A stretch of 64,000 nt of DNA from contig NW_003314280.1 of NCBI RefSeq assembly GCF_000143415.4, positions 1,426,894 through 1,490,893 on the forward strand, in the 5' to 3' direction. The position numbers and the translations under genes are program-made. Under the pieces are notes generated by a model. It ran no database searches and was not told the DNA's origin. It was given only the letters and a program-made list of their open reading frames with translations. This DNA is from Selaginella moellendorffii (taxonomy: Eukaryota; Plantae; Lycopodiophyta). This document shows positions 53,926 through 54,948 of the stretch, piece after piece; positions within the stretch are counted from its first letter, which is position 1; every line of letters starts with the position of its first letter.

Positions 53926-54948
53926 ATGGCTACCCAATTTACGCTCCTTGCGAGAGGCGCCAATCTGGATTTCAATCCTTGGAAGCCGCCGAATCGCAGG
54001 CCCGATCACAAGCAAGTGAGTAGCATTCGTGGCAGCATTGGCGGAGGCGCTAGCGGCGGCAGGAGGAGAGTGGAAATTAGCCCGCCCGGGTTGGGGAGCT
54101 TCAAGCCCCCCAATCTGGGATATGGATCGAGCAGGGCCAGGGATGAGCAATCGAGGAAGAGCGAGGAAGTGGTGGAGAGCATGATGGAGAGCTTGAGGAA
54201 TGGTATGGGATCGTGGCACACGAGGGCAAAGACCATCTGGGAGCTCCAGCAAATGGGATTTACCGCAGAGCAGCTCTACGATGTCGCGCTCGTCACAGCA
54301 CACTTGCAAACCGCCATGGTAGTCGCCTCGAAAGTAAGAAAAAACTCCCCATCTTTGTTTCTCTTGTTACGTTCTAGTTCTCGTGGATCACCGCATATGC
54401 CCAGAACAGGCATTTGTTTGATAGTCTTCTTCCATTGATCTAAACTCTTGTTTCCATCGATACAGGTGTATGACTCTCTAGTTCTAGCGCAAGCTTCGAG
54501 CGAGCTTTTATCTGCCTTGGAAAGCAACGAGACGCACGTATGCAGTCTCTACGAGCTCAGAATTTTGTCAAGCAAGCAGCGCAAGGTACATGGATCTCTT
54601 GGTTTTCTCATTTCTCTTTTACCTGCGAGTATAGGCAGCGGCCGAATATGTAGTCGAAAAGGGGCTGGATACCAAAGGTGCCGAAGAACTTGCTCGAGCG
54701 ATCAAGCAGCACGAACGGCGGGCCGAGCTTCGTGAGGTGCTAGCACAAGTTTACGTGACATTGCTGCTGATACTTCTATGCAGGGCTTTAGTCCGTTACC
54801 CGGTGACTGCCTCGCGTTGATGCACTACAGAGCCGCGAAGGAGAGCTCACAGGCCGACGAGAAGCAAAGCCTTGCGCAGCGAGCGCTCGAGTTTGCAGTC
54901 TCCGAGGCTGCTGTTGAGAAAATCTCCAAGCTCCTGCAAAACGTGTAA
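53926..54948 (+). CDS. Rubisco accumulation factor 1-like protein, alpha domain only; 4 exons, ~264 aa
   Basis: Exons 53926-54333, 54466-54585, 54635-54736 and 54784-54948. Transit-like N-terminus, then G.W......L...GFT...L......Q..MVVASKVYDSL, LYELRILS..QR.AAAEY, AEELARAIK, GFS..PGDCLA...YR and ALEFAVSE.A. Confidence 0.82.

What the first reader, a model, noticed from the sequence alone, without database searches (positions are those of the whole stretch)
53926..54948. RAF1-like Rubisco chaperone that stops after the alpha domain
Seen: the spliced frame ends ...ALEFAVSEAAVEKISKLLQNV* (TAA 54946-54948). The converging PPR stop is only ~185 bp away, leaving no room for a C-terminal domain. Known: canonical RAF1 has an RbcL-binding alpha domain plus a C-terminal beta-sheet dimerisation domain. 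Inference: a monomeric RAF1 paralog that could modulate or compete in Rubisco assembly. Its clean frame and three intact introns argue against a pseudogene.
Basis: partly seen in the sequence, partly recalled or inferred. Interest (0 to 1): 0.7.

Follow-up and report, generated by a model that had tools for sequence, protein, structure and literature searches.

The report
Ancient alpha-only Rubisco chaperone paralog
[quoted passage not shown] The same short form sits beside a normal full-length RAF1 in pond algae, liverworts and spikemoss, so it is an old, conserved and apparently unstudied gene family, not a broken copy.

Summary
Four exons in Selaginella moellendorffii (53926-54333, 54466-54585, 54635-54736, 54784-54948) encode 264 aa, identical to NCBI XP_024533154.1. 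The protein carries Raf1_HTH plus a complete Raf1_N domain and stops 3 residues later. The converging PPR gene's stop lies 185 nt downstream.

No RAF1 beta domain is encoded anywhere in the 64-kb window or in the second haplotype.

The truncation is not specific to Selaginella. The best relatives among 1.84 billion proteins are all alpha-only: Riccia, Marchantia, Calypogeia, Closterium, Mesotaenium and contigs assembled from public sequencing runs. They form one clade (98/94 support) separate from canonical RAF1. The liverwort genes checked share the same three intron positions with Selaginella.

Selaginella, Marchantia and Closterium each also have a canonical full-length RAF1. The Selaginella one (XP_024536106.1) is intronless and on another scaffold.

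dN/dS is about 0.25. The AlphaFold model matches the Arabidopsis RAF1 alpha domain (TM 0.85).

The GTAAGT over the stop codon is coincidental. Function is untested; the likeliest is a monovalent RbcL binder in Rubisco biogenesis. No paper describing this clade was found.

The parts
53926..54333 (+). Exon 1 (136 codons). It holds the presumed transit peptide, the clade motifs DFNPWKPPN (53968-53994) and SPPGLGSFKPP (54079-54111), an acidic helix, and Raf1_HTH (aa 84-136, 54175-54333).
   Evidence: The ATG is supported by orthologs that align from residue 6-17 onward.
54334..54465 (+). Intron 1 (132 nt, GTAAGA..ACAG).
   Evidence: An intron at the same place in the protein occurs in Riccia, Calypogeia and Marchantia.
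54466..54585 (+). Exon 2 (40 codons): end of the HTH region and start of Raf1_N.
54586..54634 (+). Intron 2 (49 nt, GTACAT..ATAG).
54635..54736 (+). Exon 3 (34 codons, 102 nt): Raf1_N profile positions 22-54. This exon is exactly 102 nt in all five species checked.
54737..54783 (+). Intron 3 (47 nt, GTGCTA..GCAG).
54784..54948 (+). Exon 4 (54 codons plus TAA at 54946-54948): Raf1_N profile positions 56-106 of 106, including the PGDCL motif. The protein ends 3 residues after the domain.
   Evidence: The stop is kept in the second haplotype.
54945..54950 (+). GTAAGT overlapping the stop codon. It looks like a splice donor but is probably not used.
   Evidence: It is present in both haplotypes. 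No beta exon exists for it to join. Liverwort orthologs stop at the same place without such a site. Only the old ab initio model P0003 uses it, and that model reads antisense into the PPR gene.
54949..55133 (.). 185-nt space between the converging stop codons of the RAF1-like gene and the PPR gene. It must hold both 3' ends. The other haplotype carries a 172-nt insertion and a 9-nt deletion here.

Best explanation
Shown: this is a real, selected gene of Selaginella moellendorffii for an alpha-only member of the RAF1 family. It belongs to an old paralog clade found in zygnematophyte algae, liverworts and a lycophyte, and it coexists with canonical RAF1. It consists of an N-terminal presequence, a conserved SPPGLGxF(K/R)PPP motif, an acidic helix, and the complete RbcL-binding alpha domain (Raf1_HTH + Raf1_N). 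It has no linker, no beta-sheet dimerisation domain and no C-terminal tail.

[quoted passage not shown] Without the beta domain it cannot form the dimeric clamp that brackets an RbcL dimer. It would therefore bind as a single unit with lower avidity. It could act as a cap or holdase on RbcL intermediates, or as a competitor that tunes access of RAF1 and RbcS. The evidence cannot tell whether its net effect helps or restrains assembly.

My odds: a real conserved alpha-only paralog, about 0.9; it acts on RbcL or Rubisco biogenesis, about 0.45. The confidence given for this field (0.55) is for the statement as a whole.
For: The model is identical to NCBI's model, and the second haplotype has the same stop.

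tblastn with 11 beta domains, including Selaginella's own, found no beta domain in the window, in the other haplotype, or around the three liverwort orthologs searched. The positive control L011 scored 1e-106.

Against 1.84e9 proteins, every hit better than 1e-31 apart from Selaginella's own records is alpha-only, except one full-length Ostreobium RAF1. In the careful tree 15 alpha-only rows form one clade at 98/94, and Selaginella's canonical RAF1 falls in the canonical streptophyte clade at 97/95. The AU test rejects a Selaginella-specific origin, p=0.0002.

The four-exon structure has identical intron places in Selaginella, Riccia, Calypogeia and two Marchantia species, whereas the canonical Selaginella RAF1 is intronless. 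Canonical and alpha-only genes occur together in Selaginella, Marchantia polymorpha and Closterium sp. Yama58-4.

pN/pS is 0.25 between the haplotypes (p=0.013; neighbouring genes 0.29). dN/dS is 0.24 between the two Marchantia species (p=1e-7).

The AF2 model has pLDDT above 90 over residues 71-264, and its best structural match is the Arabidopsis RAF1 alpha domain 4WT3 (TM 0.85, rmsd 1.5 A). Of 43 alpha-domain columns conserved in full-length RAF1, 25 are kept in the clade, including LYELR, QR and PGDC. Of six RbcL hydrogen-bonding residues of Anabaena Raf1 (PMC9485235, Table S1), R102 maps to the invariant R168, and Q164 maps to E230, the residue spinach has.

Raf1-alpha and RbcS share binding regions on RbcL, and Raf1-beta is the dimerisation domain (PMC7382273; PMC9485235).
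Against: There is no direct RNA evidence for the Selaginella gene.

Nothing here tests binding, oligomeric state or location. Four of the six mapped polar RbcL contacts differ in Selaginella (E193, Q201, M223, S172), although most clade members keep R and D/E at the first two. Eighteen of the 43 canonical conserved columns are relaxed, and about 20 positions are conserved only within the clade. That pattern fits a changed partner as well as it fits a tuned one.

The clade was not seen in named seed-plant, moss, fern or hornwort proteins, so any role is dispensable in much of the plant kingdom.
Confidence: 0.55

Rival explanations
1. The alpha fold is kept but the client has changed. On this reading the clade no longer works on RbcL. 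It binds another plastid protein or nucleic acid through its HTH-containing helical domain and its clade-specific surface.
For: About 20 positions are conserved only within the clade, and 18 of the 43 canonical conserved columns are relaxed. Four of six mapped RbcL contact residues differ in Selaginella. The clade sits on a long branch apart from canonical RAF1. The fold also has weak likeness to ParB/Spo0J HTH domains (TM 0.32-0.37), although that hit comes from this model alone and canonical RAF1 was not compared here.
Against: The most conserved RAF1 alpha motifs (W97, LYELR, QR, PGDC, R226, E230) are kept across more than 450 million years. The N-terminal F(K/R)PPP motif parallels the canonical YQPFRPPP. 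No other client of a Raf1 alpha domain is known.
Confidence: 0.3
2. The 3' end is mis-modelled. The GTAAGT at 54945 is a used donor, and the real mRNA continues to a distant beta-domain exon, giving a normal RAF1.
For: A consensus-like donor overlaps the stop and is kept in both haplotypes. Direct read evidence could not be obtained.
Against: No beta domain is detectable in 64 kb, including 9 kb downstream, nor in the other haplotype, even with Selaginella's own beta domain as the query. Orthologs in five other genomes and in run-assembled contigs, some probably from RNA, stop at the same residue with TAG, TGA or TAA and no donor. NCBI's model stops here.
Confidence: 0.02
3. It is a decaying partial duplicate: a non-functional relic of a RAF1 gene that lost its 3' half.
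For: Truncated alpha-only copies do occur inside the canonical angiosperm clade (P0009 Lithospermum, P0067). The alpha-only haplotypes differ at 8 of 266 positions, against 2 of 440 for canonical RAF1.
Against: The ORF, the intron positions and the stop position are conserved from liverworts to Selaginella. The clade is monophyletic and includes algae. dN/dS is about 0.25, and both haplotypes are intact. The canonical Selaginella gene is intronless, so this gene is not a recent partial copy of it.
Confidence: 0.03

Closest known systems
Canonical RAF1 (maize RAF1; Arabidopsis RAF1.1 At5g28500 and RAF1.2 At3g04550; cyanobacterial Raf1; Selaginella XP_024536106.1)
   Same: It has the same Raf1_HTH + Raf1_N alpha domain, with 33% identity to 4WT3, TM 0.85 and rmsd 1.5 A. 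The core motifs LYELR, QR and PGDC are kept. An N-terminal F(K/R)PPP motif parallels the canonical YQPFRPPP. An N-terminal presequence is present.
   Different: It has no charged linker, no RuBisCo_chap_C beta-sheet dimerisation domain and no acidic C-terminal tail. It forms a separate clade. It has three conserved introns where the Selaginella canonical gene has none. It carries its own set of about 20 conserved positions.
Isolated Raf1-alpha constructs used in structural work (for example PDB 4WT3, and the alpha-only density in 7XSD)
   Same: These are the same piece of protein. In the RbcL8-Raf1-RbcX complex only the alpha domains stay ordered on RbcL (PMC9485235).
   Different: Those are laboratory fragments or partly ordered full-length proteins. 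Here the alpha-only state is the natural, selected gene product. From memory, and unverified because the paper is not held, Hauser et al. 2015 reported partial assembly activity for the isolated alpha domain at high concentration.
RbcX and BSD2 (other RbcL assembly chaperones)
   Same: They would belong to the same pathway if the inference holds. All are small stromal proteins that bind RbcL intermediates and are displaced by RbcS.
   Different: The folds are unrelated. RbcX is a dimer that binds the RbcL C-terminal peptide, and BSD2 is a zinc-finger protein.
MicroProtein-type truncated paralogs that regulate a full-length relative
   Same: It is a single-domain paralog that coexists with a multi-domain parent and could compete with it.
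   Different: Classical microProteins keep the dimerisation domain and poison the parent's complex. This protein keeps the client-binding domain and lacks the dimerisation domain, so any competition would be for the client.

Membership tests
RAF1 (Rubisco accumulation factor 1), canonical | N-terminal alpha-helical domain (Pfam Raf1_HTH PF18579 + Raf1_N PF18578) | tested here: met
   HTH E=8e-16; Raf1_N over exons 2-4 to profile position 106 of 106; best fold match is 4WT3, TM 0.85.
RAF1 (Rubisco accumulation factor 1), canonical | C-terminal beta-sheet dimerisation domain (Pfam RuBisCo_chap_C PF18087) joined by a charged linker | tested here: not met
   The stop comes 3 residues after Raf1_N. 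No beta domain is found in the window or in the other haplotype. The control P0035 has it.
RAF1 (Rubisco accumulation factor 1), canonical | Homodimer that brackets an RbcL antiparallel dimer | not testable with these tools
   Needs SEC-MALS, native MS or a complex structure.
RAF1 (Rubisco accumulation factor 1), canonical | Binds RbcL and is needed for Rubisco accumulation | not testable with these tools
   Only residue conservation could be checked: 25 of 43 conserved columns are kept, and R168 and E230 are kept.
RAF1 (Rubisco accumulation factor 1), canonical | Chloroplast targeting | not tested
   No targeting predictor was available. The N-terminal 50 residues are basic and predicted disordered.
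Alpha-only RAF1-like clade (defined here) | Falls in the clade with the liverwort and zygnematophyte alpha-only proteins, apart from canonical RAF1 | tested here: met
   15 rows form one clade at 98/94. AU p=0.0002 against grouping with Selaginella's canonical RAF1.
Alpha-only RAF1-like clade (defined here) | Protein ends within 8 residues of the end of Raf1_N | tested here: met
   The tails are 1-8 residues in P0001, P0014-P0020, P0022 and P0024.
Alpha-only RAF1-like clade (defined here) | Four exons with three shared intron places, and a 102-nt exon 3 | tested here: met
   (Selaginella, both haplotypes; Riccia; Calypogeia; two Marchantia species).
Alpha-only RAF1-like clade (defined here) | N-terminal SPPGLGxF(K/R)PPP motif before the acidic helix | tested here: met
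   P, P, G, F, P, P are nearly invariant. In P0001 the motif is residues 52-62.

The most novel reading that the evidence does not exclude
Non-seed streptophytes carry a second, unrecognised Rubisco-biogenesis factor. It is a naturally monovalent RAF1 alpha domain that arose before land plants. It caps or hands over RbcL intermediates, or tunes RbcS entry, alongside dimeric RAF1, and it was lost on the way to seed plants.
Probability: 0.4. Interest if true: 0.75.

Novelty: new variant of a known kind. Interest (0 to 1): 0.6.

Why it matters
RAF1 is one of the few chaperones needed to build plant Rubisco, and its mechanism is understood as a dimeric clamp. A naturally selected version of the client-binding half alone has been kept for several hundred million years next to the full protein. 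That is a natural experiment on what the alpha domain can do without the clamp.

It is directly testable in Marchantia by knockout and in the E. coli Rubisco assembly system. It may add a component to the Rubisco assembly toolkit used for engineering. It also shows that database names hide the difference: the Selaginella protein is labelled 'RAF1.1', and the liverwort and algal members are labelled 'hypothetical' or 'unnamed protein product'.

Tried and rejected
Later local work stopped at 57020 or masked them with N, and the matching part of L001 was masked as well.

The look-up of encoding contigs found no contig on record for P0001 or P0002.

A word search with the alpha-only alignment was swamped by proline-rich words and returned only 12 proteins, so the taxon range is a lower bound.

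The Atlas search with the beta domain, run to look for a separate beta-only partner gene, gave no usable hit. A split-gene arrangement is therefore neither shown nor excluded.

Paper searches for an alpha-only or RAF1-like protein found nothing. Hauser et al. 2015 is not held. Run accessions were not found in any paper, so the species behind P0015, P0017, P0019 and P0020 are unknown.

Rejected readings:
- The GTAAGT as a relic of a lost intron. The canonical gene is intronless and the orthologs lack the site.
- A link between the truncation and the inverted repeat at 53821-53999 / 56739-56822. Liverworts have the same truncation.

The database's own record P0001 served instead. In one search a local script strung together the aligned exon columns of the two haplotypes, in memory only, to count substitutions; nothing joined was printed, saved or searched. 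In one search the counts were made per exon and summed.

Full report
OBSERVATION. An ATG at 53926 opens a frame that runs to 54333. Three GT..AG introns of 132, 49 and 47 nt separate exons at 54466-54585, 54635-54736 and 54784-54945. TAA follows at 54946-54948, and the protein ends ...EKISKLLQNV. GTAAGT sits at 54945-54950 over the stop. The next gene is a 533-aa PPR protein on the minus strand (55134-56735; Pfam PPR E=1.6e-54), so the two stop codons are 185 nt apart.

I searched exon by exon, by reference. Exon 1 holds Raf1_HTH (aa 84-136, E=8e-16). Exons 2-4 hold Raf1_N in register (profile 8-20, 22-54 and 56-106 of 106). The alpha domain is therefore complete and the protein ends three residues later. 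The database returned its own record, P0001, which is identical to the four exon translations, and I used that record from then on.

IDENTITY. P0001 is NCBI XP_024533154.1, 'rubisco accumulation factor 1.1, chloroplastic' of Selaginella moellendorffii, 264 aa. P0014 (XP_024532671.1, 266 aa) is the copy on the second haplotype scaffold, GL377583.1. Two older JGI models differ only in invented 3' ends. One of them, P0003, uses the GTAAGT as a donor and reads antisense through the PPR gene.

IS A BETA DOMAIN HIDDEN SOMEWHERE? tblastn with seven full-length RAF1 proteins hit only the alpha region of the window. A second run used eleven beta domains, including Selaginella's own. It hit nothing in the window, in the other haplotype (L001), or around the liverwort orthologs in L009, L010 and L012. 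The positive control, the canonical Selaginella gene L011, scored 1e-106.

THE CANONICAL GENE EXISTS ELSEWHERE. P0035 is XP_024536106.1, the accession used as the Selaginella Raf in PMC9321628. It has 440 aa with Raf1_HTH, Raf1_N and RuBisCo_chap_C. It is encoded without introns on another scaffold, GL377592.1. It is 39% identical to P0001.

THE TRUNCATION IS ANCIENT. phmmer of P0001 against 1.84 billion representative proteins gave 228 hits. The best non-self hits (E 3e-47 to 5e-36) are proteins in which the match ends 2-8 residues before the C-terminus. Pfam finds only Raf1_HTH + Raf1_N in them. Those that carry names are Riccia sorocarpa, Calypogeia fissa, Closterium spp. and Mesotaenium endlicherianum. 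A profile search added Riccia fluitans, Marchantia paleacea, M. polymorpha and more Closterium.

On the alpha domain alone, a careful IQ-TREE analysis of 43 rows puts all 15 alpha-only rows in one clade (UFboot 98, SH-aLRT 94). It puts Selaginella's canonical RAF1 inside the canonical streptophyte clade (97/95). A quick tree of 113 rows agrees. The AU test rejects holding the Selaginella alpha-only and canonical proteins together (delta lnL 48.7, p=0.0002). I named that group after seeing the tree, though it is the natural alternative.

The alpha-only clade groups with a set of 350-376-aa full-length proteins that I take, by length only, to be cyanobacterial (95/87). With long branches and no root, I draw no conclusion from this about when the duplication happened, beyond 'before zygnematophytes and land plants split'.

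Canonical and alpha-only genes coexist in Selaginella, in Marchantia polymorpha (P0028 / P0165) and in Closterium sp. Yama58-4 (P0049 / P0022).

GENE STRUCTURE. Exact mapping of the proteins onto their loci shows four exons with the same three intron places. Exon 3 is exactly 102 nt in Selaginella (both haplotypes), Riccia, Calypogeia and M. paleacea. tblastn recovers the same four pieces in M. polymorpha. The stops are TAA, TAG, TGA and TAA, and the liverworts have no donor-like site there. The GTAAGT in Selaginella is therefore coincidence, not a relic.

TRANSCRIPTS. Unnamed members come from contigs assembled from public runs: SRR8128902-08, ERR12684111/2 and ERR2041121. In these contigs the ORF is uninterrupted and is followed by 258-1163 nt with no beta domain (L002-L008; L014 has about 150 nt and was read by eye). 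Three contigs from different runs end within 3 nt of each other, about 395 nt after the stop, as an mRNA 3' end would.

For Selaginella itself I have no direct evidence. One search lists 14 runs from 7 studies that are guessed, not recorded, to be RNA. They hold 0.33-0.61 of the sampled 31-mers of 53880-55130. My estimate is that a spliced mRNA could hold at most about 0.74 of those words and genomic DNA about 1.0. The contig sets of these runs are only 6-57 million letters. This fits expression but does not prove it.

SELECTION. Between the two haplotypes the exons differ at 13 sites, 7 synonymous and 6 not, plus one 6-nt in-frame indel. That gives pN/pS 0.25, against 0.29 for each neighbouring gene. 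Introns diverge by 3.5% and exons by 1.6%. The binomial p against neutrality is 0.013. Between Marchantia paleacea and M. polymorpha dN/dS is 0.24 (34 synonymous, 29 not, p=1.4e-7). The alpha-only protein does evolve faster than canonical RAF1: 8 of 266 positions differ between haplotypes, against 2 of 440.

STRUCTURE AND SURFACE. AlphaFold2, run with a 32-row alignment, gives mean pLDDT 84. Residues 1-60 are disordered, and eleven helices span 69-263 at pLDDT above 90. Foldseek's best matches are RAF1 alpha domains: 4WT3 (TM 0.85, rmsd 1.5 A, 33% identity), then Anabaena, Arabidopsis and Synechococcus Raf1 in complex with RbcL.

Of 43 alpha-domain columns conserved at 80% or more in full-length RAF1, 25 keep the same residue in the alpha-only clade. 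These include W97, LYELR 164-168, Q174/R175, K200, R204, G217, D218, R226 and E230. About 20 other positions are conserved only within the clade.

The six Raf1 residues that hydrogen-bond RbcL in Anabaena (PMC9485235, Table S1) map as follows by the HMMER alignment:
- R102 to R168, which is invariant.
- H106 to S172 (T in spinach).
- R127 to E193 (R in most clade members).
- D135 to Q201 (D or E in most clade members).
- Q157 to M223.
- Q164 to E230 (E in spinach).

The clade also shares an N-terminal SPPGLGxF(K/R)PPP motif, which echoes the canonical YQPFRPPP, and a further (F/W)xxFKxPN motif upstream of it.

MECHANISM. Known: Raf1-alpha docks on RbcL where RbcS later binds, and Raf1-beta makes the dimer that lets two alpha domains clamp an RbcL dimer (PMC7382273, PMC9485235). 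In AtRaf1 the alpha domain is residues 75-264, the linker 265-287 and the beta domain 288-434 (PMC12452902).

Inference: a protein that is only the alpha domain would bind RbcL one-to-one with lower avidity. It could cap RbcL assemblies, or compete with RAF1 and RbcS. Whether it helps or restrains assembly cannot be told from sequence. A changed client is the main rival reading (about 0.3).

NOVELTY. The gene is annotated, but under the name of canonical RAF1.1. The liverwort and algal members are 'hypothetical' or 'unnamed'. Seven paper searches found no description of an alpha-only RAF1 clade. The library lacks most subscription journals, so this is absence in what could be searched. No named seed-plant, moss, fern or hornwort member appeared among the top hits. 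With clustering at 50% identity and four unnamed members, that is only a hint of loss.

LIMITS. There is no read evidence for the Selaginella gene. No targeting prediction was made. The taxon range is a lower bound. The tree is unrooted. After, places 57024-57066 were left out of everything.

Noticed in passing
window 53821-53999 and 56739-56822: Inverted repeat (three arms, 82-91% matched). A condensed, flipped copy of the head-to-head junction lies directly upstream of the PPR gene's ATG (56735, minus strand). The junction it copies comprises the first codons of the M32 carboxypeptidase plus codons 14-25 of the RAF1-like gene. The middle 87 nt, including the RAF1-like ATG, are missing from the copy. 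The PPR gene may have acquired its upstream region by a local inverted duplication.
   Followed up: partly
window 53875-53926: The M32 carboxypeptidase (minus strand, Pfam Peptidase_M32 E=2e-146) and the RAF1-like gene are head to head, with start codons only 50 nt apart. This is a very tight divergent pair.
   Followed up: partly
window 55102 versus L001:7177-7351: The other haplotype carries an insertion of about 172 nt, and a 9-nt deletion at 55045-55053, in the short space between the converging RAF1-like and PPR genes. The 185-nt spacing is therefore not fixed.
   Followed up: no
They were not examined further and no letters of them were sent to any search.
   Followed up: no
That makes two relatives of Rubisco-assembly chaperones in one window. 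The liverwort loci fetched here list no such neighbour, so this is probably chance.
   Followed up: no
L012:10646-10798 (Marchantia polymorpha, LVLJ01002250.1): The old model AXG93_1955s1000 (P0165, 296 aa) misses the last exon, which lies beyond an intron of about 3.5 kb. With that exon the protein is a complete alpha-only RAF1-like ending ...ARQRFEVV*.
   Followed up: yes
P0009 (Lithospermum erythrorhizon, 274 aa) and P0067 (272 aa): Alpha-only proteins that sit inside the canonical angiosperm RAF1 clade and end at the same domain border. They may be independent truncated copies or cut gene models.
   Followed up: no
P0095, P0167 (Closterium): Gene models that join leucine-rich repeats (PF00560) to the alpha-only RAF1-like domains. 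They may be fused neighbouring genes rather than real architectures.
   Followed up: no
L015 and L002-L006 (runs SRR8128902-08): One study yields two distinct alpha-only sequences (P0015 and P0020, which are sisters in the tree). They could be two paralogs or two species. In L014 and L015 the frame is open upstream of the called start, so those proteins are longer than listed.
   Followed up: partly
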